Below the pieces are notes generated by a model. The model saw only the letters and a list, made by a program, of their open reading frames with translations. It searched no databases and was not told the DNA's origin. A stretch of DNA of 64,000 bases from Mytilus trossulus (taxonomy: Eukaryota): the NCBI RefSeq assembly GCF_036588685.1, contig NC_086377.1, positions 10,354,001 to 10,418,000 of the forward strand. Direction: 5' to 3'. Positions 39,477 to 64,000 of the stretch are shown here, in pieces. A program made the translations under genes and the position numbers. Numbering within the stretch: the stretch's first letter is position 1; each line of letters starts with the position of its first letter.

Positions 39477-40243
39477 ATGGCACAGGCAGCCTCTAAAACA
39501 TGTGAGATATGTATAAGTGCTCCAGGATCCCAATACTGTTTGGAGTGTGAACAAAACTTTTGTGAAAATTGTAAAACTTTTCATAGTAGGCAGAAGATAT
39601 CAAAAACTCACCAGTTCCAGTCTTCCTCTGATGTAATCCCGGAGGGTAAATCGAAATGTAAGGACCACAATGAAGACTTCAGTTTTGTATGCAAAACATG
39701 TGACGTAGTAGTGTGCAGTAGTTGTGTGACTGGCAGTCACACAGGGCATGCTTTTTCCAAGCTTCTGGACAGCATTAAACAGTTAAAGGAGAAGAACACA
39801 ACATACCTACGTATAAGAGTACAACAGTCAACACAAAACATGAAGCAGATAGAAAAAGGTATAAAGGAATTTGATGTCAAGGTGGAAGGAGTAGTCAAAG
39901 CTATTACAAAAGAAGGTACACAACTCAAGGCTATGGTTGATAAATGTGTTGCAGAGATGATTTCATCGGTCAATGATCAATCTAGGAGAGAAAAGGACAA
40001 ATTGACAAAGATCATGGCAGATACTAGAATGGATTTGAAGGCAGGAAGCAATTTAGACATGCAGATTGATGAACTCGACAAGATCAGAAACGATGGTAAT
40101 TTGTTACAGTCTTTACAGAAGCTTACAGATGACAATGCAAAGCTGACGATAAAGCCAATTCCCGAGTTTCCGAACATAAGGTATACTGCGAAGTCCGCAA
40201 CAGATAACGACGTTAAACAACTGTTTGGTAACTACATACTCAG
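39477..40243 (+). CDS. RING-less TRIM-like protein, coding exon 1 (B-box1, B-box2, coiled-coil)
   Basis: CEIC..CLEC..CENC..H..H and CKDH..CKTC..CSSC..HTGH followed by a helical heptad region; donor ctcAG|GTAATT in phase 2. Confidence 0.93.
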
Positions 40244-40475: not shown

Positions 40476-42164
40476 GAAACCAAATTTCTTGGTTTACTTT
40501 TCGATAAAAAGTTAACCTTTCTACCCCATATCAAAATGTTAAAAGCGAGATGTTTAAAAGCTTTAGATATTTTAAAAGTTGTCGGCAGCACTGACTGGGG
40601 TGCTGATCGCAACATTTTACTTAATTTATATAGATCTCTTGTTAGATCGAAACTAGATTATGGCTCTATAGTGTATGGCTCTGCAAGGAAGTCCTACATA
40701 CAGATTCTCGATGCTGTGCATCACCAAGGTTTGCGTCTCTGTCTTGGCGCATTTAAAACCTCACCAGTTGAGAGTCTGTATGTAGAGGCTGATGAGCACT
40801 CACTCACTGACAGACGTTTGAAGCTTGGACTTCAATATGCTGTCAAACTAAAAGCCCATTCAGATAATCCTGCCTACAGCTGTGTTTTTAATCCGATTTA
40901 TGAAGATATTTTTGCAAAACATGAAAATAAAATTCCTCCGTTAGGTTTACGTTTAAAACCACATTTAGCTTCTTTTGATTTAAAATCTGTTGCTCAAGTT
41001 CAAACTTGCAAATGTCCTCCATGGGAACTTCCCAAACCAAAAATGATATTTGATCTCCGTGAACACAATAAAAATAAAACAAATCCTCTTTTAATTCAGC
41101 AACACTATGCTGAAATTAAAGCCGATTATCTAGATTTTTCAACTGTATATACTGATGGATCAAAAGATGGTGATAGAGTTGCATCTGCTGCTGTCTTCAG
41201 GGACAGAGCTGCAACCCTCCGTTTACCATCTGATGCATCCATCTTTACTGCTGAAGCAGAAGCAATAATTTTGGCTTTGAAATTTATTGCTTCTTCAGAT
41301 AAATCCAAATTTATTATATGTTCGGATTCACTTTCATGTTTACAAGCTATACGAAATACTAAAATTAAAAACCCAACAATCCTGAAAATTTTATATGTAA
41401 TGAGGAATTTAAAAATTCTTCTGAAAGAAATAATATTTTTATGGGTTCCGAGTCATGTTGGAATCCTTGGAAACACAGCTGTAGACCTTGAGGCAAAGAA
41501 TGCCCTGGGTGACCCTCTATCTAACTGTGATATACCATATACTGATTTTAAATCTAATATTAGAGAATATGTTTTTAATATATTGAAAAATAAATGGAGT
41601 AAAAAAGATGATAATAAATTGCATGAAATTAAACCTAGTTTAGGCAAACCTTTTGATAATATTATGTGCAGAAAAGATCAGTGTGTTATTACTAGATGTC
41701 GTATTGGTCATACTAGAATAACACACGAGTATCTTTTAAAAAATGAAGATGAACCACAATGTGTTCCTTGCAACTGCAAGTATACTATTAAACATGTTTT
41801 AATTAATTGTATTGACTTTGCTGATATTCGTAAGAAGCATTTCAATGTCAATAATATGTATGATTTATTTAATGATGTTCCATTTACAAATATTGTTGCT
41901 TTTTTAAAAGAAATTGGAATTTATTATAAAATATAAAAATGTTATTATATTTAAATCGATTTTAATTTTTATCACGTTATTTTACTGTTGATTTTTAATT
42001 GTATATACTCAATTTGCTTTAGTCAATAATTTTAGTATACTGAAGGACTTTTTGTCTTATTTTAAAATATGCTTTAAATTGTAAAAATATTCGAATTAGC
42101 TCTCGCCGCGATATAGCCTTTTTGTGCTAATGCGGCGTAAAGCAACCAACAATCAATCAATCAA
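40476..42164 (+). mobile_element. 5'-truncated I-group (Nimb/I-like) LINE, copy 1, in intron 1
   Basis: ORF with end of RT region, RNase H (YTDGSK..AEAEAI..SDSLS..WVPSHVGILGN..D) and CxxC..H..C knuckle; (TCAA)n tail; 12-bp TSD TCAACATGTGAT (40464-40475, 42165-42176). Confidence 0.95.
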
Positions 42165-42737
42165 TCAACATGTGATCCAGTAGATAAATGCAGGATCTAT
42201 GGCATTTTACATTTGAAGTTGTATTGATACATGTACGTTTACCTATCTCGACAATACGTAAACATATGTAGAAATGCAAAAATAAAATTGAGAATAGAAA
42301 TGGGGAATGTGTCAAAGAGACAACAACCCGACCAAATAAAAAAACAACAGCAGAAGGTCACCAACAGGTCTTCAATGTAGCGAATACTTGCTTCCAAACT
42401 AGTACAGATATAACTGTTTTTCTCGTTATTTAAATATGTTATTCTAATTGCGTGCATTTTATGTATTATTATAAAAGAAATAAAGACAAAAGAAGTATAC
42501 CGCTTTACAATAGGAATATATCGATTAAACTGAGAGAAAAATCCGAACAAAACTGAGGGAAACACACATTAACTACAAGTGGAAAGCAACAGAACAACAT
42601 TAACACTGTACTGCTACAAAAACAAACGCCAACATACAAAGAAAATTACTATTTGTTCACAACTGTCATACTCCTGACACTTGACAGAACATTTCATGAA
42701 AAAAAAATATAAAAAAAATCTGTTTATCTTTTATCAG

Positions 42738-42794
42738 TGAAATGCGTACACAACAAATCATGAACAAAGAAAGAGAATTGCCTTCATCCAAGAG
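42738..42794 (+). CDS. TRIM-like gene exon 2 (57 nt; EMRTQQIMNKERELPSSK)
   Basis: tttatcttttatcAG ... aagAG|GTAGGG; open and symmetric phase 2-2, continuing the exon 1 frame. Confidence 0.78.
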
Positions 42795-45321
42795 GTAGGG
42801 AAATATTTGTGTATATTAAACAGTTTTAAAGTTACATATTTGGCAATATAAACTTGTTATCAAATCTGTGAGTGAATTACACATTATTTTCGATAAATCA
42901 ATTAGAATGTCTCTCCTCTTTTTTCCACTACGTACGTTAGAACACACTGGCTCGAGCACGATTGCGTTTTAGTAAATAAATCATATGATATGCAAACGCA
43001 TACTAGTAGCATCAATTATGTTCAATAAAGTTAAGATTTTGTTGCATTTAATTTTCGTAAATGTACTGTTCGTTAAAATGTGCCTGCTTCTCAGGTTGAA
43101 ATATTTAAAACCTCTTTACACTTATAGAATTTCTCTATGGCTTATGTATCTCCTCTTTTTTCCACTACGTACGTTAGAACAAACTGGCTTGAGCACGATT
43201 GTAACTAAATAAATCATCTAATGATATGCAAACGCAAACTAGTATCATTAATTATTTTCAATAGTGTTTAAATGTTGTTGCATTTAATATTCGTTAAATG
43301 TAAATTGTCCCTGCTTGTCTAGTTGAAATATATAGAACCTCTTTAAACTTATACGATATAACCAAAATATAAAAGTCATTCATCACAATTATCTGGACTA
43401 TTGATGCACGTATAATCAAAAGACGAAATACTGTTTTACAACAACATAACTGTTTTGTTAAGTGTAGTTTGTCTTTTTGTAAATAGTCTTTGTATGTCAT
43501 ATCTTTTCTCCTATAGAAATGATCTCTTTTAATGTGGTGACTGAAAGCAGATTTTATTTTAATCTAATCTCCCCACCGAACACACATCTATATAATATAT
43601 CATTGGAAAGAGGAAATTGCGTACTATAATAATATGCCTGTCGTCAGGTACTGATATGGTCACATTTTTTTTATAAATTGAGGTCAAAGGTCATATGTAA
43701 AAATCTGTGAAAATTCGGGAGGGTTTCAATTTTGACATTTTTTCTTTTTTCTAAACTCTATCTAAACACACATGATACTGTTTTGGCTTTAATAATGTTT
43801 GTTATTAAAAAACTAAAACGATGTTTTATAAACAAAACTTCATAAATCAAGTTTTCAACCTATAAAATGTTTAGAGCACCTTAACCTTATAAAAGTTTTC
43901 AGTTTCAGGTAAAAATTAAGTGTCATGCAGGGCAGTACTTAAATATTTAAACTAACATATTGGGTGAGGTATCAAACCAAAGCAATAGAACTCTACAGTC
44001 AAATATTACCTCAAATTGAATTTTCGGATACTTCAGGTTTTTTTATCGACTACTCGTTTTTCACAATTATTACTGCTTCCATAGTAGTATCTGTTGTTGT
44101 GTTTTCTACGCTGGTTAATATCTATTACATTATAGGTTTTGTACCTATATCCCCTCTTTTTCCCTTTGCAACGTACCACAAACTTCAAAAGTATTCCATA
44201 TAAAAAAAAAACATGTAATATGCTTGCAAATAAAACAACTCTTAAAATAAGACCAAATGATACATAAATTAACAAATAAAGGTCCTGTACGGGCTTCAAC
44301 TATGAGTAAAATTCATACGACATAGTCTTCGATTCCTGAAATGAATAAATTGAAACAAAAGAAAAATATAACGGCCTGATTAATATACAAAATAAATGAG
44401 AAACAAACAAATATAGTATACAGAAACAAACACCAAACACTGCATAACCGTCGCGTGACTTGTAAAACACATAAAATGTGGCGGGATTTAACTTTTTTAA
44501 AGTCGCGCCAACACTCCCCTAACCTCGAGGAAGGGACTGTGGGTACATTTTGTACCAGTGAAACAAGCTTTATACCAAATCCACCGTTATCGCCATCATC
44601 TTTATTTTGATCAACCGTTACAAGACATGTTTTAATATTTCTACCAATTTCACTCATGGCCACAGTTCTGCACAAGAAAGGTTCTGGTCAAAGCAAACAC
44701 ATTATTTTGAGTTTTTCTTTACAAGTACCGATAGGGTACTACCATTATAAGAGCACTGATAAGAAAACAATTGACGTACATTTGAGTTGAGTTCGTTTTT
44801 ACGCCAAAAAATGGCGGCGCGACAACTTTGTAAGCCTTTGAAAAATCGCTCATAAATTACTATATATCATTTGTCAGGATATTTGTCTTTAAATTCATAA
44901 AATTAAGCAAATTAACATTGATGTAGTAAATGCCAATACTAAACTTTTATCATTTAGATAAAAGTTTTGGGATTCTCAAATCTGGATTCCCAATTTTTTC
45001 TCCGTGGGACAGATTTGCTCTTGTTATATGGAACGCGGGTTTTTCAATGACGTCATCATAACATCATAAAAAGTGCATAAAAGACTGAAGGAACCATTCT
45101 GTTTAATAATTGAAAAAACGTTTTGACGAAAATGATAGTTTAGTGGTTACAATAAATGAATTATGTTACGCGGGACAGCCTTAAAATCGTCGGTTTTTTT
45201 AAGGTGAAGCTTGTCGCATGCAGCAAAAAACATAGTTTCGGTGATTATTTTTTTCGTCTTTATTTTGAAATTCTTTAGTTTTAAAAATACGTACAATAGC
45301 AATGGATAGGATATCACAAAA

Positions 45322-46300
45322 TTATATAATTGGACTTGCATCTTGCCAACTACACCGCATTTCCAATAAGGTACGAACATCGCGCGTAACGTCATAGTAT
45401 ACATTTACGCAATTTTTATAGTGCCATTTCCAGAGAAAAGTATTGGCTGAATGCAGTTTCATCGAGTAACAATAAAATAAATTGCAATGAATACGAAGGC
45501 ATTGACCGAATTGAAGATGGAAAAGACAATTCATCCGAAGTTGGGTATTCTTCTGTAGAGTTTCGAAGTCTTTTCGAAGTATACTTGCAGCGGAATGATA
45601 TATATGTCCGTTATTTATGTCTTTTACAGTTGTCATTGAGATTTTGAGGTCAGTTTTCAATTGACTAGCAGTTGATATGGCATCTCAAATAGTTTTTTTG
45701 CTATTAAATATTATGTTATAGTTGCCTTGAACTTGTTGAAGATGTTTGACAACTGAATTTCTATAGAAATCAATGAGTTTAGACAGCATTTTACAAGTAG
45801 AATATTTAAAATAAGAATCAGCCGGAAGAAAAGATCTATATTTATCAAGTAACGGACGTGTCATGAGGAACGACCATTGAATCGTTCTCCATAGCCAAAC
45901 TAAAATGAGTAAAAGCAGTATCGAGATCCGAAATATCTGCTTCTACGGGTTTCGATTTGTTTTTGTTTTTTTTCGTTTTTAGCAAATATTTTGTAATACA
46001 ACCGTAATGACAGAGTGCTTGAAGTTTAAAAGATGGACGGGAAACTGTTCTCAACGTTAACCTTATCTGACACGAATAAAACATTCTTGATACGCTCATC
46101 TGATTTGAACTTCAGTTGTTTTTGATCTTACTAAAATGTTTTGTTGCAGCAAAATATACAAGCGCTCCAGTTGAACGCGTACAAATACCCGAAACTGAGG
46201 GACAACAGTCCGATAATTTTATGTCGTCATTAAATGACAGATAGAAGCTTCCTGACTCTAAAAGGGGGAACAAATATATTTACTTGTGTAACTTTTCTAA
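45322..46300 (-). mobile_element. Decayed coding remnant of a probable DNA transposon in intron 2
   Basis: Fragmented minus-strand peptides (CHYGCITKY; IYHSAASILRKD) resemble large DNA-transposon proteins; many stops; family not established. Confidence 0.3.
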
Positions 46301-47731
46301 CATGAACAACTATAAACTTCCTGCACAGAGTTCTTTAAATTAACAGCTTCCGCATGCAACATCTTGATGTTCACCTCATCCAATCTTTTATTCAAGTGCA
46401 GATTCAAAATCGACTTCCCTATACTAGTAAAATAATTTTTGGCATATTAAGCACTGCATAAAATTAAACGACTTTTGCCTTTTCTTTAGACTTATAATGG
46501 AGCAAGTTGGAACGAACTAAACATATCACGGAATATTTACTGAAACTATCCGTTAATTATTTTGATTTTACAATAAGTCTTTTTTGATGTTTTATAAGAA
46601 GAAATTATAGAATACAAACATATACAAACAAAGTATGTGGCATATATCAGTGCACTTTAATTGAAAACATGTGTATATAAAGCAAAGAAGGTAGTAATTT
46701 CATATTTCAGTTGAGATCAAATTATTGACTAATACACAATATGTGACGGAAGGCAAGTGATTGAATTCAATGTTGAAATTGAAGTTTTTTACTCCATTCT
46801 TTTCCATTGATTTCGTAACGTTTCTTTGATATTTTGGTTCCGAAATTGTTATCACTTACTAGTTTTATGAAATATTATATGCTTAAAATATTATGGGTTA
46901 AAGTTTATTACTACTATGAAGAAGAAACTAAAGTTTGTGTCTGAATATGCAATTAAAATTACCTCGATTTTAAATAGTCCAAACTTTGCAAATTTCATAG
47001 ATTAGAAGAAAATAAAATACTGAATAGAATACTCTGACATATAAAAATAGCTCCAGGAAAAACTATTTCAATTAAATGTAAGCAAACCTACACACTTTTT
47101 TTTATTTTGAAAAAGGGGGGTTGAAACTCTCAAATATACTACTAGTCCTTAAAACGACTTTTTAGAAAAGTGTGACCGTACGAAATTTTGAAGACAGGGC
47201 AAAAATTAAAAAAGACATATTTGTCTTTAAGTTAAGACAATTTTAAGCCGTGTTTTATTTGGGAGATTGAACTCGCGATCTAGACGACTTTTTACACTTC
47301 TGTCACCGCACTATTTGTGATATTGTCACCTCTTTTTACCATAAAAACTATTATTGATTCACAAAGTTATTCGCAATCGACTGTTAATAAACAGTTCAAC
47401 CACGCCAGCATTCACATTCACAATGAAGGGGTAAAAGATTTCAGCAGCCATATCTACTCTAATTAAGATAGTTCGTCATTTCATTCAGTTTGTAAGTGTC
47501 TGTAGGAAAGACGGGGAAATAGAGGGAAAAGCGTATGCAATCAGAAATAATTCTATAAGGATTGGAAAGATAAAATATATATGACCTCAAATTGAATATA
47601 TTGTTTTGGTTGATATCATCTAATTTTGTTTAAGGAACGACATACACCAATACGACCATTACAGCTAAATAAAAGTCGAACTTAATTATAAGTTCTTGTC
47701 AAACATTACGTATACTACGTAACGACAACAA

Positions 47732-47946
47732 ATGGTGAACTGTGATACTCTTTGTGGGTAAACAGCTTCTGTTCTACACTGAACCATAGAAAACATCTCT
47801 GATGACATGGTGAACTGTGATACTCTTTGTGGGTAAACAGCTTCTACACTGAACCATAGGAAACATCTCTGATGACATGGTGAACTGTGATACTCTTTGT
47901 GGGTAAACAGCTTCTGTTCTACACTGAACCATAGGAAACATCTCTG
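47732..47946 (+). repeat. Three tandem ~70-75-bp repeats
   Basis: atggtgaactgtgatactctttgtgggtaaacagcttct... x3. Confidence 0.9.
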
Positions 47947-48205
47947 AAGTAAAGCAATATATCTTTCTAATAAAAAAAATGTATCTCTGTCAAGGTGTAA
48001 GTTGATTTTTTTTTTTTTATAAATTATCATTTCAATTCATTCGAGATTGTCTAATTTGGTTTATGACTCTAGTATATATTTCAAATGCTTTTATGATATT
48101 TTTGCACTGTTTATGTGTGTATCAGTTAGTAATAGCTTGTTGGATTTTAATATTATCTTAGAATAGAGTAAATTTTAAGTCAATCAATTGTGTTGCTTAT
48201 TATAG

Positions 48206-48271
48206 TGATTACAAACAGGATGTGATACCAAAGGAGCAAGGAAAATGCCTGTACAGATGTGTCAAGTGTCG
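48206..48271 (+). CDS. TRIM-like gene exon 3 (66 nt; DYKQDVIPKEQGKCLYRCVKC, first Cys pair)
   Basis: tgttgcttattatAG ... tgtCG|GTAAGT; open, phase 2-2. Confidence 0.82.
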
Positions 48272-48906
48272 GTAAGTTTATTATTATTGTTTCTATGGAC
48301 ATGACACAGAATTGTACATCTATATCATGTGTCGTATCAAATGTATAATTTCAAAGTGTCAATGAAGTGCAAAATACATGGGTCTTTTATCTCGAAAAAT
48401 GCAACAGGTGTCATGTGTAATTGGCTTGCGCCACACAGATGTTTGGACTGTTTAAGAAATCAATAAGAAACATCGATGAACAAACCAATAAGAGTGATAT
48501 AGAGCAGCATTATATCTGTTAACTTGTAAATAATTTACACAAATGTAATGAGCAACATAGTTTCGTCTTCGTCGGCAGTGATGTAAATGGATGTATAATA
48601 ATAATACTAGACGCCATATTTTGGTACTCATATTTAATCACTCATAGGGCGCATTTGGTGGTTTGATACTAAATCATTCACGGGTATTTTGCATGATTTG
48701 CATGATTTGCATAATATGGAGAATATAAAAAAAAAATGTGGTATGATTGCCAATGAGACAACTATCCACAAAAGACCTAAAAGAAATTCATTTTTAATCA
48801 GTTAAGATGTGGTCTAGAGCTCGCATGCATGTCAGTAACTGTCTTTGTTGATATACGCATCAATGCCATTTTGCATAGGTTTTTTTAGTTACCTTTTCTG
48901 ACATCA

Positions 48907-50656: not shown

Positions 50657-53574
50657 TGTAGGCAAGCCCGACGAACATCCTGGAAAAAATTTGTCTCGGG
50701 GATTACATCTCGCACTCCGATGACAAAAGTTTGGAATATGGTAAATAAAATAAAAGGTAAAAATTCTAAAGCCACTGTAAAACATTTGAAAGACGGCAAT
50801 ACTTTATTAACATCTGAAAAGGATATTGCCAACAAACTTGGTGAAACTTTTGCAAAGTCTTCTTCTTGTAACAACTACAGGGAAGACTTTAAAAAAGTTA
50901 AAAAACAAAAAGAAAAAATTAAATTAAACTTTAAATCAAAAAATGGTGAAAATTATAATAAACTATTTTCTCTTGAAGAACTTAAAACATCTCTGTCAAA
51001 AGCCCATGATACAGCTTGTGGGCCTGATAATATTCACTACCAACTCTTAAAACACTTGCCAGATTCCTCGCTAGAAGCTCTCTTGCAGCTCATGAATAAC
51101 ATCTGGGAATCTGGTGATTTACCATCAATCTGGAAGCTTGCAACCGTCGTGCCTATTCCAAAACCAAGTAAAGATCATACGGATCCTATTAATTATCGAC
51201 CAATTGCTCTTACCAGTTGTGTCTGTAAAACACTCGAACGGATGGTCAATGATCGACTTGTTTGGTTCCTGGAATCCAATGGGCTATTAGCCAATATCCA
51301 GTGTGGATTCCGACAGGGTCGCAGTACTCTTGATCATCTTGTTCGATTCGAATCATTTGTCCGTAATGGTTTTGCGAAAAATGAGCATGTGGTGTCGGTC
51401 TTTTTCGACCTTGAGAAGGCCTATGATACTGCATGGAAATATGGTATTTTAAAAGATTTATTTGATATGGGGTTGAAAGGCAATATGCCTAATTTTATTT
51501 CTAATTTTCTCTCTAACAGACAATTTAATGTTAGAGTTTATCGACCATGTCTGATCTGTATGATCAAGAGATGGGTGTCCCTCAGGGCAGTATTTTATCT
51601 GTAACATTATTTAGTCTTAAAATTAACAGCCTTGTTGAAGTTTTAAAAAGTAATATTGAAGGTTCATTGTACGTTGATGATTTTTTAATATGTTACAGAG
51701 GCAAAAATATGAATAACATAGAAAGACAATTACAACTATGTCTTGGAAGAATTGAAAAATGGGCCTCGGAAAATGGTTTTAAATTTTCCACGTCAAAAAC
51801 GGTCGGGATGCATTTTTGTAACAAAAGAAAATTGCATCTTGATCCAGAACTAACTTTGTACGGCAACCCAATTAAAATGGTTGATGAAACCAAATTTCTT
51901 GGTTTACTTTTCGATAAAAAGTTAACCTTTCTACCCCATATCAAAATGTTAAAAGCGAGATGTTTAAAAGCTTTAGATATTTTAAAAGTTGTCGGCAGCA
52001 CTGACTGGGGTGCTGATCGCAACATTTTACTTAATTTGTATAGATCTCTTGTTAGATCGAAACTAGATTATGGCTCTATAGTGTATGGCTCTGCAAGGAA
52101 GTCCTACATACAGATTCTCGATGCTGTGCATCACCAAGGTTTGCGTCTCTGTCTTGGCGCATTTAAAACCTCACCAGTTGAGAGTCTGTATGTAGAGGCT
52201 GATGAGCACTCACTCACTGACAGACGTTTGAAGCTTGGACTTCAATATGCTGTCAAACTAAAAGCCCATTCAGATAATCCTGCCTAAAGCTGTGTTTTTA
52301 ATCCGATTTATGAAGATATTTTTGCAAAACATGAAAATAAAATTCCTCCTTTAGGTTTACGTTTAAAACCACATTTAGCTTCTTTTGATTTAAAATCTGT
52401 TGCTCAAGTTCAAACTTGCAAATGTCCTCCATGGGAACTTCCCAAACCAAAAATGATATTTGATCTCCGTGAACACAATAAAAATAAAACAAATCCTCTT
52501 TTAATTCAGCAACACTATGCTGAAATTAAAGCCGATTATCTAGATTTTTCAACTGTATATACTGATGGATCAAAAGATGGTGATAGAGTTGCATCTGCTG
52601 CTGTCTTCAGGGACAGAGCTGCAACCCTCCGTTTACCATCTGATGCGTCCATCTTTACTGCTGAAGCAGAAGCAATAATTTTGGCTTTGAAATTTATTGC
52701 TTCTTCAGATAAATCCAAATTTATTATATGTTCGGATTCACTTTCATGTTTACAAGCTATACGAAATACTAAAATTAAAAACCCAACAATCCTGAAAATT
52801 TTATATGTAATGAGGAATTTAAAAATTCTTCTGAAAGAAATAATATTTTTATGGGTTCCGAGTCATGTTGGAATCCTTGGAAACACAGCTGTAGACCTTG
52901 AGGCAAAGAATGCCCTGGGTTACCCTCTATCTAACTGTGATATACCATATACTGATTTTAAATCTAATATTAGAGAATATGTTTTTAATATATTGAAAAA
53001 TAAATGGAGTAAAAAAGATGATAATAAATTGCATGAAATTAAACCTAGTTTAGGCAAACCTTTTGATAATATTATGTGCAGAAAAGATCAGTGTGTTATT
53101 ACTAGATGTCGTATTGGTCATACTAGAATAACACACGAGTATCTTTTAAAAAATGAAGATGAACCACAATGTGTTCCTTGCAACTGCAAGTATACTATTA
53201 AACATGTTTTAATTAATTGTATTGACTTTGCTGATATTCGTAAGAAGCATTTCAATGTCAATAATATGTATGATTTATTTAATGATGTTCCATTTACAAA
53301 TATTGTTGCTTTTTTAAAAGAAATTGGAATTTATTATAAAATATAAAAATGTTATTATATTTAAATCGATTTTAATTTTTATCACGTTATTTTACTGTTG
53401 ATTTTTATTTGTATATACTCAATTTGCTTTAGTCAATAATTTTAGTATATTGAAGGACTTTTTGTCTTATTTTAAAATATGCTTTAAATTGTAAAAATAT
53501 TCGAATTAGCTCTCGCCGCGATATAGCCTTTTTGTGCTAATGCGGCGTAAAGCAACCAACAATCAATCAATCAA
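50657..53574 (+). mobile_element. 5'-truncated I-group LINE, copy 2, in intron 3 (frameshift plus premature stop)
   Basis: RT motifs (YRPIALTS, QCGFR, FFDLEKAYD, GVPQGS, YVDD), RNase H, knuckle; frameshift near 51540; TAA at 52285-52287; (TCAA)n tail; 12-bp TSD TCATATTTAAAA (50645-50656, 53575-53586). Confidence 0.95.
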
Positions 53575-53960: not shown

Positions 53961-53981
53961 AAAGGAAATGAGAACTGATAT
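53961..53981 (+). CDS. TRIM-like gene exon 4 (21 nt; (R)KEMRTD)
   Basis: tctgtttcatctttcAG|a AAG GAA ATG AGA ACT GAT AT|GTAAGT; phase 2-2. Confidence 0.8.
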
Positions 53982-54988: not shown

Positions 54989-54991
54989 ATT
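54989..54991 (+). CDS. 3-nt microexon ATT
   Basis: attttcAG|att|GTAAGTgtcaagtagaaaacagataagtat. Confidence 0.75.
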
Positions 54992-55321
54992 GTAAGTGTC
55001 AAGTAGAAAACAGATAAGTATAGCGTCTTATTGTATATGTTGGTTTGTTTGTTTGTGTTGGTGTATACAGATATTTATATAAATTAGTTAGGTAGCTTTA
55101 CAATTTGAAATAATCTCAATCACTATGAGGAAAAATGAGAAAACAAATTAAACTCATAGTAATGACTTTACTATTGAATTATCTGACAGAACACTCGATA
55201 TTCTCAAAATGTTGTACTTTTATTGCATTACTTTTTCAATTAAATCCAATGACGATTTTTTGTTTTTAACTGTATGATTTGCTGTTAAAAAAATTGATTA
55301 TTTTGACTGGTTTTTGTTGAG

Positions 55322-55324
55322 CGT
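55322..55324 (+). pseudogene. Decayed CGT microexon
   Basis: ttgttGAG|cgt|GTAACT: acceptor CAG>GAG and donor +5 G>C relative to intact copies. Confidence 0.55.
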
Positions 55325-56258
55325 GTAACTGTCAAGTAACAATCAGAAAGGTATAATTATATATACTGTAGTTCATTATACAAAGAGAGTAATACAAAGA
55401 TGTTAAGTAAAACAATAAACATGTCATGATTGTGATGTATGGTAGCACCCGTTATGTCTACAAAAGAGGCGGAAGATACCAAGAGACATCTAAACGCATA
55501 ACGTTATAATTTAGTACCCAGAACGACAAAAAGACAATCAAATGAATACAAAATACAACAATCAGGATTGCGTTGTTTTCTATATGTATCTTCATCTTCA
55601 TTACATAACGTGTGATTAATTCAGTAATAAAAGTAAAACAATACACATGTCATTAACGTGATATATGTGAGACTCGCGGGTCGTCTACAAATGAGGCGAA
55701 CGATACCAAAAAGACATTCAAATGCATTGGTCGAATATAAACTGACACCGCCATGGCTAAATCCTAGTGCTACAAAAACACCAACAACAGTCGTCAAACA
55801 AATTGTGTGATTTCATGCACTGATTAATACATTTACCGTCATTGGAAATGCTGAAAGCCGAAATGTATAAACCTGTATAGTTAACAAACCTGTTGTCAGT
55901 TTGTTTTAGATTTATGAGTTTGACTGTCCCTTTGGTATCTTTCGTCTCTCCATTGAAGTATATGTCCTTGGAAAAAACACATCAATATGATTATATCGAC
56001 CTGACGTCCATTTCTTTTTTAGATTTCTTAACAAATTATAAATGTACAAAGCGCCAAATCACACAACTTTTACATTGCAATAACTGGCATCATTATATCT
56101 TATTGACTATACTTTTCAAAAATATGACAAAAACAAACTGTCATCTACAAATGTTCTCCTATCACATTACTACTTATTCCAATAATTATATTGGAGATAA
56201 CTTAATTCTTTTCTAAATGGTATGCTGTATTTAATGGTTATTAATTTGATTGTTTCAG

Positions 56259-56264
56259 ATCGAT
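56259..56264 (+). CDS. 6-nt microexon ATCGAT
   Basis: tgtttcAG|atcgat|GTAAGTgtcaagtagcatacagataagta. Confidence 0.75.
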
Positions 56265-56815
56265 GTAAGTGTCAAGTAGCATACAGATAAGTAATTTACA
56301 CTTATATAATATGCACTTTAAAATGTGATAACATGTATATAACGGTGTTAGAAGAGTTGCAAAGTTAAACAATAAACATACCATTGTAAGAGATAAATTT
56401 TCTCAGTACCGCTGTTCGAAAGTCGTATATCGAATGAGAGAAAAAAAGTAGGTGTCACGTAGAAAACAGATAAGTATAGCGTATAAAGATATATGTAGGT
56501 CATTATATAAAGATATCTGTACCAATTAGTTAAGTAATAGTGAACATTAGATAAACCTTTAAAATGATGTATGGTAGACGTGAGCATAGCTCTAAAATTT
56601 GAAATCATCAACATAACTATTAGGCAAGATGAGAAAACAGAATCTAACTCATAGTAATGACTTTACTTTTGAATTATCTGATAGAACACTCAATAGTCTC
56701 GAAATGATGTACTTTTATTGCATTGCTTTTTTAATTAAATCCAATAACGATTTTTGCTTTTGCCTGAATGATTTGCTGTTCACTATAATGATTAATTTGA
56801 CTGATTTTTGTTCAG

Positions 56816-56818
56816 CGT
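56816..56818 (+). CDS. 3-nt microexon CGT
   Basis: tttttgttcAG|cgt|GTAAGTgtcaagtaacaaacagaaatgtat. Confidence 0.7.
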
Positions 56819-57325
56819 GTAAGTGTCAAGTAACAAACAGAAATGTATAATTATATAAACTGTAGTTCATTATATAAAGAGAGTAATACAAATATGTTAA
56901 GTAAAACAATGAGCATGCGTATAATATGATGTATGATAGCCCTGCGTTATGTTTACAAGAGAGGCGGGAGATACCAAGAGACATTCAAACGCTTAACGTT
57001 ATAATTTAGTACGACGAAAAGACAATCAAATGAATACAAAAAAACAAACAATAATATGATTATATCGACCTGACGTCACTTTTGTTTAGGTTTCTTAACA
57101 AATTATAAATGTACAAAGCGCCAAATCACACAACTTTTACATTGCAATAACTGGCATCATTATATCTTATTGACTATACTTTTCAAAAATATGACAAAAA
57201 CAAACTGTCATCTACAAATTTTCTCCTATCACATTACTATTTATTCCTATAATTATATTGGAGACAACTTAATTCTTTTCTGAATGGTATGCTGTATTTA
57301 ATGGTTATTTATTTGATTGTTTCAG

Positions 57326-57328
57326 GCG
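57326..57328 (+). CDS. 3-nt microexon GCG
   Basis: tgtttcAG|gcg|GTAAGTgtcaagtagcatacagataagta. Confidence 0.72.
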
Positions 57329-57879
57329 GTAAGTGTCAAGTAGCATACAGATAAGTAATTTACACTTATATAATATGCACTTTAAAATGTAATAATATGT
57401 ATATAAAGGTGTTAGAAGAGTTGCAAAGTTAAACAATAAACATGCCATTGTGAGAGATAAATTTTCTCAGTACCGCTGTTCGAAAATCGTATATCGAACG
57501 AGAGAAAACAAGTAGGTGTCACGTAGAAAACAGATAAGTATAGCGTATAAAGATATATGTAGGTCATTATATAAAGATATCTGTACCAATTAGTTAAGTA
57601 ATAGTGAACATTAGATAAACCTTTAAAATGATGTATGGTAGACGTGAGCATAGCTCTAAAATTTGAAATCATCAACATAACTATTAGGCAAGATGAGAAA
57701 ACAGAATCTAACTCATAGTAATGACTTTACTTTTGAATTATCTGATAGAACACTCAATAGTCTCGAAATGATGTACTTTTATTGCATTGCTTTTTTAATT
57801 AAATCCAATAACGATTTTTGCTTTTGCCTGAATGATTTGCTGTTCACTATAATGATTAATTTGACTGATTTTTGTTCAG

Positions 57880-57882
57880 CGT
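57880..57882 (+). CDS. 3-nt microexon CGT
   Basis: tttttgttcAG|cgt|GTAAGTgtcaagtaac. Confidence 0.7.
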
Positions 57883-58389
57883 GTAAGTGTCAAGTAACAA
57901 ACAGAAATGTATAATTATATAAACTGTAGTTCATTATATAAAGAGAGTAATACAAATATGTTAAGTAAAACAATGAGCATGCGTATAATATGATGTATGA
58001 TAGCCCTGCGTTATGTTTACAAGAGAGGCGGGAGATACCAAGAGACATTCAAACGCTTAACGTTATAATTTAGTACGACGAAAAGACAATCAAATGAATA
58101 CAAAAAAACAAACAATAATATGATTATATCGACCTGACGTCACTTTTGTTTAGGTTTCTTAACAAATTATAAATGTACAAAGCGCCAAATCACACAACTT
58201 TTACATTGCAATAACTGGCATCATTATATCTTATTGACTATACTTTTCAAAAATATGACAAAAACAAACTGTCATCTACAAATTTTCTCCTATCACATTA
58301 CTATTTATTCCTATAATTATATTGGAGACAACTTAATTCTTTTCTGAATGGTATGCTGTATTTAATGGTTATTTATTTGATTGTTTCAG

Positions 58390-58392
58390 GCG
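58390..58392 (+). CDS. 3-nt microexon GCG
   Basis: tgtttcAG|gcg|GTAAGTgtcaagtagc. Confidence 0.72.
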
Positions 58393-58943
58393 GTAAGTGT
58401 CAAGTAGCATACAGATAAGTAATTTACACTTATATAATATGCACTTTAAAATGTAATAATATGTATATAAAGGTGTTAGAAGAGTTGCAAAGTTAAACAA
58501 TAAACATGCCATTGTGAGAGATAAATTTTCTCAGTACCGCTGTTCGAAAATCGTATATCGAACGAGAGAAAACAAGTAGGTGTCACGTAGAAAACAGATA
58601 AGTATAGCGTATAAAGATATATGTAGGTCATTATATAAAGATATCTGTACCAATTAGTTAAGTAATAGTGAACATTAGATAAACCATTAAAATGATGTAT
58701 GGTAGACGTGAGCATAGCTCTAAAATTTGAAATCATCAACCTAACTATTAGGCAAGATGAGAAAACAGAATCTAACTCATAGTAATGACTTTACTTTTGA
58801 ATTATCTGACAGAACACTCAATAGTCTCGAAATGATGTACTTTTATTGCATTGCTTTTTTAATTAAATCCAATAACGATTTTTGCTTTTGCCTGAATGAT
58901 TTGCTGTTCACTATAATGATTAATTTGACTGATTTTTGTTCAG

Positions 58944-58946
58944 CGT
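58944..58946 (+). CDS. 3-nt microexon CGT
   Basis: tttttgttcAG|cgt|GTAAGTgtcaagtaac. Confidence 0.7.
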
Positions 58947-59456
58947 GTAAGTGTCAAGTAACAAACAGAAATGTATAATTATATATACTGTAGTTCATTA
59001 TATAAAGAGAGTAATACAAATATGTTAAGTAAAACAATGAGCATGCGTATAATATGATGTATGATAGCCGTGCGTTATGTTTACAAGAGAGGCGGGAGAT
59101 ACCAAGAGACATTCAAACGCTTAACGTTATAATTTAGTACGACGAAAAGACAATCAAATGAATACAAAAAAAACAAACAATAATATGATTATATCGACCT
59201 GACGTCATTTTTATTTGGTTTCTTAACAAATTATAAATGTGCAAAGCGCCAAATCACACAACTGCTACTTTTCAATACAGTAACTGGCATCATTATATTT
59301 TATTGAATATACTTTTCAAAAATATGACAAAAACAAACTGTCATCTACAAGTTTTCTCCTATCACGTTACAATTTATTCAATTAATGTATTGAAGATAAC
59401 TTAATTCGTTGTTAATGGTATGCTGTATTATATGGTTATTTATTTGATTATTTCAG

Positions 59457-59459
59457 TTG
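59457..59459 (+). CDS. 3-nt microexon TTG
   Basis: tatttcAG|ttg|GTAAGTttcaagtagcaaacagataagtat. Confidence 0.72.
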
Positions 59460-59994
59460 GTAAGTTTCAAGTAGCAAACAGATAAGTATAACATGCACTT
59501 CAAAATGAATTAATTTGAATATAATGGTATTAGTAGAGTTGCAAAGTTAAACAAAGAACATAACATTTAAGTGAGAAATATTCTCAATACCGCTGTTCGA
59601 AAGTCGTTTATCGAATGAGAGAAAACAAGTGAGTGTCAAGTAGAAAACATACAGGTATAGCGTATTATTGTGTATGTAGGTCATTATATAAAGGTATTTG
59701 TACCAATTAGTTAAGTACTAGTGAACATTAAATAGCCCATTAAAATGATGTATGGAAGACGCGATCATAGCTTTAAAATGTGAAATCATCAAAATAACTA
59801 TGAGGCAAGATGAGAAAACAAAATAAAACTCATACTAATGACTACTATTGAATTATCTGACAGAAGACTCGATAGTCTCAAAGTATTGTACTTTTATTGA
59901 ATTACTTTTTTAATATAATCCAAAGACGATCTTTGCTTTTGCCTGAATGATTTGCTGTTCACTATAATGATTAATTTGACTGATTTTTGTTCAG

Positions 59995-59997
59995 CGT
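59995..59997 (+). CDS. 3-nt microexon CGT
   Basis: tttttgttcAG|cgt|GTAAGTgtcaaggaacaaacagaa. Confidence 0.65.
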
Positions 59998-60858
59998 GTA
60001 AGTGTCAAGGAACAAACAGAAAAATATAATTATATATACTGTAGCTCATTATATAAAGAGAGTAATACAAGTATGTGAAGTTAAACAATAAGCCTGCTTA
60101 TAATATGATATATGATAGCCGTGCGGTGTGTCTACAAAAGAATCAGAAGATACCATGAGACATTCAAATGCATAACGTAATTGTACCAAGAACGACAAAA
60201 ATACAATCAAATGATTACAAAATACAACAATCAGGATTGTGTTGTTTTCTATATATCTACATTACATAAAGTGTTATAAGTGAAGTAAAGTTAAACAATA
60301 AACATACCATAAATATAATATATGTGAGACTCGTTCCGTCTAATAAAATGGCGAAAGATATCAAAGAGAGATTCAACAGCATTGGTCGGATATAAACTTG
60401 CACCGCTATGGCTAAATCCTAGTGAGACATACAAATAAACAACAGTTTATAAAACAAAACGTAATCTGATGTTATTTCCTGTCTTCTAGATTAATCTTCA
60501 TTGAAAATACAAAATCAAAAATGGGTAAAACTTATGACATATACTAACCAAAACTGTTGAAGTTATTTGGCATCATTATTTAATTTAAATTGAATATATG
60601 ATTGTCCTTTTAAATTACCGATTCTTGATAAGTCTTCACCAGATAGTGACGTTCAAAGACATGGTATCCTGCTCAGCCCTGTCATAGAATTAATTGTCTC
60701 CTTTGTATTAGTCAATCAGGAGTATAATAGAAGAAACTGTCATTTAACAAAATGTTTTTTTTATATTTTTATTACGTATTCAACTAATTCCATTAAAGTT
60801 GGTTAATTCATTGCAGAATTGTATGCTGTAATTTATAATTATTATTATTTGTTTACAG

Positions 60859-60861
60859 CTT
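60859..60861 (+). CDS. 3-nt microexon CTT
   Basis: tttgtttacAG|ctt|GTAAGTtttaagtagaaaacagataagtat. Confidence 0.75.
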
Positions 60862-62064
60862 GTAAGTTTTAAGTAGAAAACAGATAAGTATAGCGTACAT
60901 TTACATAGACAATTTATAATGTAAGGCTTTTGATGCAATGGTGGTGGTAACATAGTTAAGTAAAACAATAATCCCACAACTTACATGACGTATCTCAGAT
61001 GCACGCTCCATCTTTAAAGAGGAGGAAGATAATAGAGAGACATTCAAAATCATTAGTAAAATGTAAACTAAACAAATACCATGGCAAAAATATAAAGAGA
61101 CAAACAACAGTAAAAAAAAACCCCAAAAGACAAGGTAATTTTAGAGACGATGAAAGCCAATACAGTTTTAAATAAAAATAGAGAACATACACATAACTGG
61201 TTGAACTATCACTAGGACAACTTTTTTTGAGGATGTTAGTTAAGAGTCTAGGGTTAACGTTTGTTACATATCCGATAATTTGTCAAACCTTCATAGGATT
61301 GTCTTGAAAACTTTGGCAGAAGATATTTATGATTCAGAAATAAGGTTTTTAAAATATATGTTCATTTGCAGTCTTTTTCTTATAGATGGTTTTGAATTAA
61401 TTTAGTTTTACTTGCAATATTTTTAAACCTGCATTAATTTTTATGAAACTTGGGCTTTATTAATACTGTATAATATCGTTTTGTATACAATGTGAAATAT
61501 CTGATAAATCCATAAATGAACTCATCATAGATAGTTATTAAAACTTTGCTTATCAGATAGTCTTTGTTGTTAGTGTTTTATCGTAAATAATCCAATTCTA
61601 AGGTTTTTTTTCTCGCCAATTAATATATTACAGAGTGACGTAATTGATAAAAGTAAGAACTCGTTTGTATTGGTTTTTTCTAATTTGATTGTTATATAAT
61701 TAACAACTGGATACCATAGAATAAAAAAACATACAGAAGTATTTTGTTATCATGATTGTTATAATTTCATAATATATAATCAATGAGGTTTCAATATCCA
61801 TTTACAATTATTATGGGAGAAAAATATTCATTTTTATCATTTAATTTGCTTTTTATTTGTATATTTTTACTTTTTTGTGATAGCTCTCACATTTAGGAAA
61901 CTACAGTATCTTCTAAATATGATTAACATTTCCAGACAAAATGCTGAACTTAATATGCACAAGTAAAACGTTGTATCTGATGTTTTTAGATGAGTATTTT
62001 CCCTTTCGTTGTTCTCTCAAACTATTCATTCGATCTTAATTGAATGTATATTTCTTTTTTTCAG

Positions 62065-62070
62065 GGGCAT
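62065..62070 (+). CDS. 6-nt microexon GGGCAT
   Basis: tttctttttttcAG|gggcat|GTAAGTaccaaccatataagtat. Confidence 0.7.
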
Positions 62071-62118
62071 GTAAGTACCAACCATATAAGTATGTTGTGA
62101 TAAGTTTAAACAAAATAA

Positions 62119-64000
62119 AAAATAAAACAGCATGTGATATTGAAAATTGCATCTGATATTTTAGTAAATGGGAAAATATATTAAAAAAAAGTTCGTCCCT
62201 CTTTTATCCTTTAGTTTATGGTATAAGTGTATAGTGTACGTACACACATTCATGGTACTGTTTTGTTCTAAAATGATACAACCCATTTTAAGGAGCCACG
62301 TTATATATTATATGAGAATTGATATGGCATTTTGATGAAGCAACATTTTTTTACATTATTTAAAACGTTATGTTATACAGTAAATCTTGCATCTTGTGTT
62401 TCATTTAGGTACTTTATATAGTATGTTATTTTAATTCACAATTGTCGATTCGTACTTATTTATCTTTGATTATAACTACCCTACGTCAACTTGTTTTAGG
62501 ATGAAAACACCAAAGTGTCTTTCGAAAGTCTTGGTGTATAAAAACAAAAATCACATAAATTATGCAATTCATAATAGAAGTTGTTTGATGTAATGTTGTT
62601 ATTAAAATAGCTAGGCAATACAATACACATACCATTTAAATAATGTCACACAGACGTGCATAACGACTACAAAAGAGTCGGAAGATTTAGAGTATCGTTA
62701 AAAATTGTAAAACCAGAAATGTTTTAAGCCAATGACATATGATAACCGGAACAGTTGAAATATTAGACCATAAAAAGCATAAGTGAAACAAGTTTACTCA
62801 ACCTCAGTTCAACTTAACTTTTGTGTGGTGCAACCTTAGTTCTCAAATGATTTCTAAATCTATAAAGCGACACGTTTAATTCATACACATACTGTTTATC
62901 ACATTCCAATGTTTGCCATGCTTGATTTATATACTAATTCAATAATGAGACTTAAAAATAATCTACTATCACAACTACCTATGGTATTCTTATATTGTCG
63001 TTGTTATCTCTCTTTGCTAAATTGTATGCTGTTTTCTGTGGTTATATTTTTATAAGTTGTCCCTCAAGTTAGTGTCAAGTTAGGCAAACACATAGGTATG
63101 GACATTAGTAATTTATAATATAAGGTTTTGTTAAAATGGTAGTAGTCGACTATTAGATTAATAAAAAAAATCATATCAACTTAATGTTGTATCTCAGACA
63201 GGTTCGTCTACAAGGAGGCAATGCCATGACAAACAGCAGTATACACAAAAACAAAATCAGCATTTTGAGTCATGCGTTATAGCGGAGCGAAATAAATCAG
63301 ACATTTTCAGTTTGACTGTCTGGTACCTTTCAGCCCTCTTTCATAGATTATACTGCATAAGAGATACTGAAAGCAAGGATAGTGAAAGCCAAAAATTATA
63401 AAAACAAATGTATTTGAAGAACTACATTAACATATCAACATATATAAAAATGGTTAAATCAACTCAAAGTCAACGTTATTCGTTTTTGAATAATAATTCA
63501 ATATTATGCTGTATTCAGTGATTATTTATTTATGTTTTCAGCAAGTAAGTGTCAAGTAGCAAACAGATAAGTATAGAAAACAATTATATATGCAATTTAT
63601 AATATAACGATAGTTATACAATGACGTCAGTAAAGCAGTAAAGTTAAACAATAAACACGTGTACTAGTACCATTTTATGAAAAGAAATATTTATATAAGA
63701 CATGATAAGATATTCGAGACAGAATTTTTAAAGCTGAGACGAATGTTTGTTTATGTGTACAGCCCGTGTTTTGTATACATATGTTGAAAAGAATGTCGGC
63801 AATTCTATACGTTTTGCATTTCCAAAATTATTCTGTCTTTCCAAAAAAGCATAACACTTTAAAAATTCAAAACGCCCAAAGCGCTTTTTGGGTTAAAGTA
63901 ACGTGCACTTTTACGAAGCGGATCAAGTCAGACATAATTTGTTCAGATTTTTTGCCACATTACAATGATTACCATAAGCATCATTGAAACAAAACACATA
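62119..64000 (+). repeat. Segmental duplication, paralogous to 1-2136
   Basis: Direct match to the window start. Confidence 0.95.
63542..63544 (+). CDS. 3-nt microexon CAA
   Basis: tgttttcAG|caa|GTAAGTgtcaagtagcaaacagataagtat; paralog of 1440-1442. Confidence 0.75.

What the first reader, a model, noticed from the sequence alone, without database searches (positions are those of the whole stretch)
54989..63544. Phase-2 design makes each 3-nt microexon a one-amino-acid letter
Seen: all junctions are phase 2, so a 3-nt exon supplies the wobble base of the previous codon and the first two bases of the next. Each exon therefore specifies nearly the same residue whatever its neighbours: cGT=V, gCG=R, cGG=G, aTT/cTT=L or F, cAA=K or N, cAG=S or R, tTG=C or W. 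Junction-dependent letters add diversity. Stops arise only in limited joins (TG+A; TA+A/G after 22666). Inference: this is the phase best suited to modular residue-level shuffling, which argues for selection rather than chance.
Basis: partly seen in the sequence, partly recalled or inferred. Interest (0 to 1): 0.78.

Follow-up and report, generated by a model that had tools for sequence, protein, structure and literature searches.

The report
One-residue microexons; phase 2 is inherited
A mussel TRIM-like gene builds a short protein loop from a chain of 3- and 6-base exons that really are read in phase 2, but that phase is an inherited family trait rather than a design chosen for shuffling.

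Summary
The array lies in the 3' part of a Mytilus trossulus B-box/coiled-coil (TRIM-like) gene. Every intron is phase 2 and every internal exon is a multiple of 3 (57, 66, 21, then 3 or 6, then 15 nt).

Four RefSeq paralog models thread exactly through 25 such microexons; shuffled loops threaded 0 of 500 times each. RNA contigs from three studies show a 21-nt exon followed by ATT-GCG, TTT-GCG or CTT-GGGC.

The inference does not hold:
- Phase 0 is more modular than phase 2, both in simulation and from the genetic code.
- A sister subfamily on another chromosome has phase 2 at all its introns but no 3-nt exons.
- Duplicated units inherit their phase.

The five CGT ("V") units lack a downstream ATAAGTA motif, and that class is skipped in every model examined. 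Every ATAAGTA-type unit is included, so combinatorial splicing is not shown.

Selection does appear, on residues: exon positions 2-3 are far more diverse among paralogs than the flanks, position 1 is invariant in two of three unit types, and CGT units never vary.

This gene's own array has no RNA evidence; its RefSeq model is exon 1 only.

The scan had already noted this array and the upstream paralog on the same window (s1-829892, s1-829986).

The parts
39477..40243 (+). Exon 1: two B-boxes and a coiled coil. It ends AG| (phase 2). Its read-through stop gives the 256-aa RefSeq model of this gene.
   Evidence: ORF; Pfam B-box, ANCHR-like B-box and TRIM_CC; P0089 equals the window translation; donor
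42738..42794 (+). Exon 2, 57 nt, phase 2 at both ends
   Evidence: joint 42792->48204 (GT..AG) in one contig each of X3, X4 and X5
48206..48271 (+). Exon 3, 66 nt, carries the first Cys pair (C..C) and ends CG| (phase 2)
53961..53981 (+). Exon 4, 21 nt, ends AT| (phase 2).
   Evidence: The same 21-nt exon class follows exon 3 in RNA contigs and in paralogs
54989..54991 (+). Microexon ATT, first-position type, ATAAGTA downstream; predicted to be used
   Evidence: its homologue GTT is used in P0019; ATT follows exon 4 in the X5 contig
55322..55324 (+). CGT unit with GAG acceptor and GTAACT donor, no ATAAGTA; predicted to be skipped
   Evidence: its homologue is skipped in P0019
56259..56264 (+). 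Microexon ATCGAT (6 nt), B type, ATAAGTA downstream; predicted to be used
   Evidence: sequence
56816..56818 (+). CGT unit, no ATAAGTA; predicted to be skipped
57326..57328 (+). Microexon GCG, B type; predicted to be used
   Evidence: GCG is used in P0019; GCG follows the first microexon in the X3 and X5 contigs
57880..57882 (+). CGT unit; predicted to be skipped
58390..58392 (+). Microexon GCG, B type, in a recent copy of the ~1064-bp unit
58944..58946 (+). CGT unit; predicted to be skipped
59457..59459 (+). Microexon TTG. It is the only exon in the range that can make a junction stop (TG+A).
   Evidence: TTG is used in P0019
59995..59997 (+). CGT unit; predicted to be skipped
60859..60861 (+). 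Microexon CTT; predicted to be used
   Evidence: CTT is used in P0025; CTT followed by GGGC in the X4 contig
62065..62070 (+). Microexon GGGCAT (6 nt); predicted to be used
   Evidence: an identical exon is used in P0015
63542..63544 (+). Microexon CAA, last 3-nt type. The gene continues beyond the window: L004 1297-1302 (TAGACA), L004 2393-2407 (15-nt exon, second Cys pair) and L004 3595-3622 (28-nt coding end).

Best explanation
The stretch is the 3' half of a RING-less TRIM-like gene of Mytilus trossulus, with two B-boxes and a coiled coil. The loop between two cysteine pairs (C..C, then C.CGG) is encoded by a chain of 3- and 6-nt exons.

Shown:
- All introns of the gene are phase 2 and all internal exons are multiples of three. 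A 3-nt exon therefore gives the wobble base of one codon and the first two bases of the next.
- Paralog models and RNA contigs contain such exons.
- The phase is shared with ordinary exons of the gene and with a sister subfamily that has no 3-nt exons.

Inferred:
- The phase was inherited from the ancestral intron and copied with each tandem duplication of the unit (about 1064 bp here). It was not selected for modularity.
- Units are recognised through a strong acceptor, a perfect GTAAGT donor and a second donor-like ATAAGTA about 20 nt downstream. CGT units, which lack that motif, are passed over.
- Diversity arises mainly in the germ line, among some 40 or more paralogs, by gain, loss and fast change of the two residue-defining bases. 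It does not arise from shuffling at splicing.
- In this gene nine units (ATT, ATCGAT, GCG, GCG, TTG, CTT, GGGCAT, CAA, TAGACA) would be used and five CGT units skipped.
For: - Frames.
- RNA: the exon 2-exon 3 joint and the loose ends behind 48269 in X3, X4 and X5 read as a 21-nt exon followed by TTT-GCG-T, CTT-GGGC and ATT-GCG-C.
- Threading: RefSeq models P0019, P0025, P0015 and P0004 thread through 6, 8, 6 and 5 microexons (16 of 3 nt, 9 of 6 nt), all in phase 2. Each gave 1, 2, 1 and 1 chains, and shuffled loops gave 0 of 500 each.
- Genome-wide: YAG + 1-9 nt + the 14-nt post-donor module occurs 127+4 times against 2+4 for the control. Of the 100 rows listed, 97 have 3 nt, 2 have 6 nt and 1 has 5 nt, by my count.
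- Ancestral phase: the chromosome-11 gene of P0056 has exons of 66, 30 and 27 nt, all phase 2.
- Usage: 20 of 20 used units carry ATAAGTA and 0 of 6 skipped CGT units do.
- Diversity at exon positions 1/2/3: 0.51/0.44/0.44 (n=19), 0.00/0.37/0.71 (n=18) and 0.00/0.80/0.44 (n=12). Flank means are 0.04-0.09, with one at 0.36. The CGT type is 0/0/0 (n=17).
- Phase 0 beats phase 2 for modularity.
Against: - No RNA evidence for this gene's own array. The contigs on exons 2-3 are only 90-95% alike (6-9 differences in the 66 nt of exon 3), X1 had none there, and the 30-letter limit shows only 7-9 bases past exon 4.
- The gene's RefSeq model is exon 1 alone.
- RefSeq models are predictions. I could not see their supporting evidence, so threading shows that the models contain the exons, not that the exons are expressed.
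- One model per gene cannot exclude minor isoforms, including ones with CGT.
- Units are related by descent. The 20/0 against 0/6 table and the diversity figures are therefore not independent samples.
- The sites were chosen by an exact 14-nt downstream match.
- The invariant first base could reflect acceptor context rather than synonymy.
- The ancestral-phase argument rests on one chromosome-11 gene. Intron loss there is an alternative history.
- Exon 3 here ends CG| where paralogs have GG|, so Arg stands in place of the usual Gly. The copy may be decaying.
Confidence: 0.75

Rival explanations
1. Phase 2 was favoured by selection because it makes each 3-nt exon a near context-free amino-acid letter, so that splicing can shuffle residues into many loop variants.
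For: - All internal exons are symmetric, so any subset keeps the frame.
- Only 1.6% of 16384 subsets carry a stop in phase 2, and phase 2 gives the most distinct peptides on the real array: 7248 against 5160 and 3152.
- Some RefSeq models skip whole exons 2, 3 or 4 in frame.
- The residue-defining bases are hypervariable.
Against: - Phase 0 is better by stops, by peptide count and by certainty of the residue.
- Phase 1 has no stops at all on the real array.
- The high phase-0 stop count comes from one exon (TAGACA), which evolved under phase 2.
- Phase 2 is shared by the introns beside ordinary exons and by a subfamily without 3-nt exons.
- No model or contig shows alternative use of a 3-nt exon. 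All ATAAGTA-type units are included.
Confidence: 0.07
2. The array in this particular gene is an unused or decaying copy. The units keep their sequence only because they were duplicated recently, and the gene makes just the short exon-1 protein.
For: - The RefSeq model is exon 1 only.
- No contig 99% alike on exons 2-3 in four runs.
- Arg in place of the family's Gly after the first Cys pair.
- Retrotransposon ORFs lie in introns 1 and 3.
- Very recent unit copies: 1053 of 1061 bases identical between two units.
Against: - All 14 splice donors, the exon lengths and the final 15-nt and 28-nt exons are intact, and no stop arises with or without the CGT units.
- Many intact paralogs also have exon-1-only models, because read-through stops mislead annotation.
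- Only four runs of contigs were laid.
Confidence: 0.2
3. Phase 2 is kept for another reason. With GTAAGT-type donors it places TAA or TAG one codon after any unspliced donor, so a missed splice ends the protein cleanly instead of adding intron-coded residues.
For: - 14 of 14 donors of the predicted gene read (2 bases + G) followed by TAA or TAG.
- Family models stop after exon 1 (256 aa, ending R), exon 2 (275 aa, ending KR) or exon 3 (279 or 297 aa, ending CG).
Against: This is a general property of phase-2 introns with consensus donors and needs no selection. I have no evidence that the truncated proteins are made or matter.
Confidence: 0.1
4. The sites are not exons at all. They are a dispersed or tandem intronic repeat that happens to mimic splice sites.
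For: The units sit in a ~1064-bp tandem repeat. Relic copies lack an acceptor (56448, 57512, 58576, 59629) (sequence). The CGT units appear unused.
Against: Exact threading of four protein models with 0 of 500 shuffles. RNA contigs carry the unit letters right after exon 4. Lengths are 3 or 6 nt. Diversity is position-specific.
Confidence: 0.03

Closest known systems
Schistosoma micro-exon genes (MEGs)
   Same: Chains of very short exons, mostly multiples of three, separated by long introns. Automatic annotation is difficult, and the genes encode a variable protein family (passages of bioRxiv 10.1101/2023.06.21.545858).
   Different: MEG exons are given there as 6-81 bp, mostly 15 bp, make up most of the coding region and encode secreted proteins. 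Here the units are 3 and 6 nt and fill only a loop of about 8-13 residues after a 767-nt first exon of an intracellular-type B-box protein. No sequence relation was tested or is expected. Splicing-made variation, which I recall as reported for MEGs, is not shown here.
Single conserved 3-nt microexons (RPS24, Drosophila homothorax, MAP4K5, bee ELAV)
   Same: A 3-nt exon spliced between long introns (titles and abstract starts in the listing).
   Different: Those are isolated, conserved, alternatively used exons. Here up to nine 3-6-nt exons stand in series, are copied in tandem and differ between paralogs.
Tandem alternative exon arrays of the Dscam type (recalled, no call)
   Same: Tandem duplicated exon units with conserved intronic elements next to each unit.
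   Different: Those arrays choose one exon out of many. Here the models include all competent units, and no docking or selector pairing was tested.
Recursive splice sites (ratchet points; recalled, no call)
   Same: A polypyrimidine tract and CAG placed almost directly against GTAAGT inside long introns.
   Different: Recursive sites leave nothing in the mRNA. Here the 3 nt remain, as the models and contigs show.
TRIM / B-box-coiled-coil proteins
   Same: B-box zinc fingers and a TRIM-type coiled coil. The family is large and tandemly expanded.
   Different: No RING and no known C-terminal domain were found. The C-terminal C..C / C.CGG tail matches no Pfam family.

Membership tests
TRIM (tripartite motif) family | B-box zinc finger | tested here: met
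   PF00643 at 53.8 bits (cut-off 24.1), two stretches; PF22586 at 37.1 bits
TRIM (tripartite motif) family | Coiled coil after the B-box | tested here: met
   PF25600 TRIM_CC at 33 bits against a cut-off of 30. It falls below the cut-off in the four paralogs scanned.
TRIM (tripartite motif) family | N-terminal RING finger | tested here: not met
   No RING family among the hits for exon 1. The protein starts 8 residues before the first B-box-like domain, so it is TRIM-like, not a full TRIM.
Micro-exon genes (MEG-like architecture) | Internal exons very short and multiples of three (symmetric) | tested here: met
   57, 66, 21, 3/6 (x9 predicted to be used) and 15 nt, all phase 2 at both ends. 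In four paralogs, 25 of 25 microexons are 3 or 6 nt.
Micro-exon genes (MEG-like architecture) | Most of the coding sequence made of micro-exons; secreted product | tested here: not met
   Exon 1 alone is 767 nt of roughly 1 kb of coding sequence. The protein starts directly with a B-box-like domain. No signal-peptide tool was run.
Alternatively spliced cassette array (combinatorial or mutually exclusive) | Different subsets of the units in transcripts of one gene | tested here: inconclusive
   Three models include all 20 ATAAGTA-type units, and a fourth threads as a single chain. There is one contig per run, with 30 letters visible. No reads of this gene were seen.
Zinc ribbon / zinc knuckle tail | Two Cys pairs forming a known zinc-binding fold | tested here: inconclusive
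   The C..C and C.CGG pattern is present. No Pfam family matches the tail of P0019, P0025, P0056 or P0141 up to E=5. No structure was predicted.
Recursive splice site | Acceptor and donor juxtaposed with no bases kept in the mRNA | tested here: not met
   The three bases are kept in the models and in the contigs.

The most novel reading that the evidence does not exclude
The one-residue exons are also used combinatorially at splicing, perhaps with CGT units as conditional letters. Each of the 40 or more paralogs would then yield many loop variants of a putative zinc-binding recognition tail. That would be a splice-made repertoire at single-amino-acid grain in a mussel immune-type TRIM-like family, with the ATAAGTA motif as the switch.
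Probability: 0.12. Interest if true: 0.9.

Novelty: new variant of a known kind. Interest (0 to 1): 0.6.

Why it matters
Serial 3-nt exons are an extreme test of exon definition. Each must be recognised with almost no exonic sequence, so the flanking module (a perfect donor plus a second donor-like ATAAGTA) and its natural negative control (the CGT units that lack it) offer a ready system for asking how the smallest exons are seen.

The position-specific diversity suggests that the family evolves its loop one residue per exon. Positions 2-3 are hypervariable, while the wobble base and the introns are conserved. This is an unusual way to build a variable protein surface.

There is also a practical point. 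Phase-2 read-through stops explain why annotation pipelines truncate these genes at 256, 275 or 297 residues. The family's true C-termini are therefore mostly missing from databases.

Tried and rejected
- **Full threading.** P0004 did not thread as a whole because its model runs on past the 15-nt exon; its loop alone threads.
- **P0015 artefact.** For P0015 the threader split the 21-nt exon into spurious pieces (GAA, A, 17 nt), because my 9-kb gap limit excluded the direct exon 1-exon 4 join. One search shows the intact 21-nt exon.
- **More observed tails.** Searching with the tail of P0019 gave only 4 proteins. Searching with that tail as a short query gave no candidate.
- **Pfam on four tails:** nothing.
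- **Literature.** 'microexon' with 'Mytilus' gave 2 unrelated papers. Six phrasings of '3-nt exon' gave 20 papers, all on single exons as far as titles and abstract starts show. A TRIM/B-box/bivalve search gave no title on this family (listing only). One search was too broad. These are the only searches behind my statement that I found no description of such arrays. Supplementary files were not asked for.
- **Clustering.** Clustering all units at 80% identity lumped the types together. I replaced it with average linkage.
- **Unit identity.** The ungapped comparison of units 2-3 and 3-4 dropped to 901 and 329 of 1061, probably through indels. I use only the first pair.
- **Rejected.** A TTT site at 47489 and a degenerate unit at 63065 are not counted as exons: they lack the module or the splice sites.
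- **Not done.** No structure prediction of the tail, no other bivalve genomes (no tool reached them), and no reads laid on the array or on the 3' end.
- **Joined model.** The joined spliced model of this gene was sent to no search tool. It was joined only inside the script, for translation and enumeration.

Full report
**What is in the stretch**

The window is G000:C5:10354001-10418000. This is the same 88,129,055-bp chromosome that carries RefSeq Mytilus trossulus 'TRIM71-like' models.

From 39477 a 767-nt first exon encodes two B-box-type zinc fingers and a TRIM-type coiled coil. No RING was found.

Homology to family proteins places exon 2 at 42738-42794 (57 nt) and exon 3 at 48206-48271 (66 nt). 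Exon 3 holds the first C..C pair.

A 21-nt exon 4 lies at 53961-53981.

Searches give 13 candidate exons between 54989 and 63544: eleven of 3 nt and two of 6 nt.

The gene continues past the window in L004:
- a 6-nt exon TAGACA (L004 1297-1302);
- a 15-nt exon with the second Cys pair (2393-2407);
- a last exon with 28 coding bases (3595-3622).

The upstream paralog ends the same way inside the window: CGG at 1440, TTATCG at 2918, a 15-nt exon at 3353-3367 and the coding end at 4482-4509.

**Is the frame phase 2?**

Yes.
- Exons 1 to 4 end with two bases of a codon: AG|, AG|, CG| and AT|.
- The 15-nt exon gives C.CGG, and the last exon gives a short tail and a stop, only if it starts with the third base of a codon. 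This matches the ends of P0015, P0019 and P0025.
- All internal exons are multiples of three.

In phase 2, 256 of 16384 ordered subsets of the 14 units have a stop. These are exactly the subsets where TTG meets the A of the 15-nt exon.

**Are such exons really used?**

There are two lines of evidence, neither from this gene itself.

*RNA contigs.* Logan contigs of four runs were laid on 42700-48400.
- X3, X4 and X5 come from three studies. X3 and X5 are on record as RNA; the RNA label of X4 is a guess.
- Each has one contig that joins 42792 to 48204 at GT..AG and runs on behind 48269.
- The 30 visible letters are the last two bases of exon 3, a 21-nt exon 4, and then TTT-GCG-T, CTT-GGGC or ATT-GCG-C.
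- ATT, GCG, CTT and GGGCAT are units of the window's array, in that order.
- These contigs are only 90-95% alike on exon 3, so they come from paralogs or other Mytilus species. X1 had nothing on the exons.

*RefSeq models.* I threaded paralog proteins through their own loci, taken from G000.
- P0019 uses exon 4, then GTT, GCG, GCG, TTG, GGAATT, GGAATG, the 15-nt exon and the last exon.
- P0025 uses CGA, CTT, GGACTT, CTT, CGG, TTATCA, CGG, TTATCG.
- P0015 uses ACG, CTG, GGGCAT, CTG, CGG, TTATCG.
- P0004 uses ATG, GGGCTT, CTG, CTG, GTATAG.
- That makes 25 microexons, 16 of 3 nt and 9 of 6 nt, all in phase 2.
- The real loops gave 1, 2, 1 and 1 chains. Shuffled loops gave 0 of 500 for each gene.

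*Genome-wide.* YAG + 1-9 nt + the 14-nt post-donor module occurs 127+4 times, against 2+4 for the reversed control. All 100 listed rows are on C5. By my count 97 hold 3 nt, 2 hold 6 nt and 1 holds 5 nt, and 30 of the 97 are CGT.

The refuting condition 'random lengths and phases in paralogs' is therefore not met.

**Which units count?**

In the three fully threaded genes, every strong candidate with ATAAGTA within 40 nt after the donor is in the model (20 of 20). Every CGT unit, which has AAATGTA-like sequence there instead, is left out (6 of 6; Fisher 4e-6, though the units are related and so not independent).

The window has five CGT units and nine ATAAGTA-type units, counting TAGACA.

Because the models include every competent unit, they give no sign of shuffling at splicing. 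With or without the CGT units, the joined reading of this gene has no stop. I sent that joined model to no search tool.

**Is phase 2 a design?**

- *Real array, stops.* Stops occur in 50% of subsets in phase 0 (all from TAGACA), 0% in phase 1 and 1.6% in phase 2.
- *Real array, peptides.* Distinct stop-free peptides number 3152, 5160 and 7248.
- These sequences evolved under phase 2, so this mainly re-identifies the frame. Even so, phase 1 has fewer stops.
- *Random 3-nt arrays* whose full isoform is stop-free. Phase 0 never creates junction stops and gives the most peptides per subset (0.78). Phase 2 gives 7.1% stops and 0.73. Phase 1 gives 8.4% and 0.73.
- *Certainty of the residue.* Given what one exon supplies, the remaining uncertainty is 0 bits in phase 0, 0.52 in phase 2 and 1.875 in phase 1.

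Phase 2 is second best, not best.

The history points the same way. All introns of the gene are phase 2, including those beside exons 1-4. A gene of the roughly 50%-identical subfamily on chromosome 11 (P0056) has exons of 66, 30 and 27 nt, all introns phase 2 and no 3-nt exons. Units copied in tandem inherit their phase; two neighbouring ~1064-bp units are identical at 1053 of 1061 positions.

The phase is therefore one inherited event with a prior of one in three.

**Where selection does show**

I compared unique units from six loci and 60 further sites. Diversity at exon positions 1/2/3 was:
- first-position type (n=19): 0.51/0.44/0.44;
- B type (n=18): 0.00/0.37/0.71;
- last type (n=12): 0.00/0.80/0.44.

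Flank means were 0.04-0.09, with one upstream flank at 0.36, probably from indels. In the B type only 2 of 74 flank positions reach the lower of the two exon values.

The 17 unique CGT units never vary.

In phase 2, positions 2-3 are the residue-defining bases and position 1 is a wobble base. The pattern therefore both confirms the frame independently and points to fast change of the encoded residue in used units only.

Caveats: the units are related, most sites were chosen by an exact 14-nt match (those positions were left out of the flank figures), and acceptor context could also hold position 1.

**A side property of phase 2**

At 14 of 14 donors, read-through gives one residue and then TAA or TAG. 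This explains the many family models that stop after exon 1 (256 aa), exon 2 (275 aa) or exon 3 (279 or 297 aa). It includes this gene's own model P0089.

**Known relatives**

- Schistosome micro-exon genes are the nearest kind (passages).
- Isolated 3-nt exons are known (listing).
- I found no paper on arrays of 3-nt exons or on this mussel family in the searches.

**Verdict**

The design inference is not. The underlying system is real in the family, but its use by this gene's own array is unproven.

Noticed in passing
window 55322, 56816, 57880, 58944, 59995; 17 unique copies genome-wide: CGT units have a good acceptor and donor but no downstream ATAAGTA. They are skipped in all threaded models and their three bases never vary. 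They may be dead units, decoys or conditional exons.
   Followed up: partly
window 39477-65407 (14 donors, the last two in L004): Because the introns are phase 2 and the donors are GTAAGT, GTAATT or GTAGGG, every unspliced donor is followed by TAA or TAG after one extra residue. This explains the truncated 256-, 275- and 297-aa database models.
   Followed up: yes
The same exon class is present in the RNA contigs and in paralogs.
   Followed up: yes
window 40413-41936 and 50720-53346: Two copies of a non-LTR retrotransposon ORF (reverse-transcriptase and RNase H-like, judged by eye from the translation) sit in introns 1 and 3 on the gene's strand. The C-terminal ~300 residues of the two copies are nearly identical.
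   Followed up: no
window 56448, 57512, 58576, 59629: Relic units inside each ~1064-bp repeat keep the post-donor module, including ATAAGTA in three of the four, but have no polypyrimidine tract or AG acceptor and a GTAGGT or GTGAGT start.
   Followed up: no
window 47489-47491 and 63065-63067: There is a lone CAG-TTT-GTAAGT site between exons 2 and 3 without the module, and a degenerate unit with a GTTAGT start. Neither was counted as an exon.
   Followed up: no
window 48270-48271: Exon 3 ends CG| where paralogs end GG|. This copy would have Arg instead of the Gly that otherwise follows the first Cys pair.
   Followed up: no
L016-L018 (G000:C11:17946001-17976000): The chromosome-11 subfamily encodes the same C..C / C.CGG tail with ordinary 30- and 27-nt exons. 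The 27-nt exon corresponds roughly to the 3 + 6 + 15-nt exons of the chromosome-5 genes. This hints that the microexons arose by splitting or by partial duplication of a small exon.
   Followed up: partly
Not examined here.
   Followed up: no
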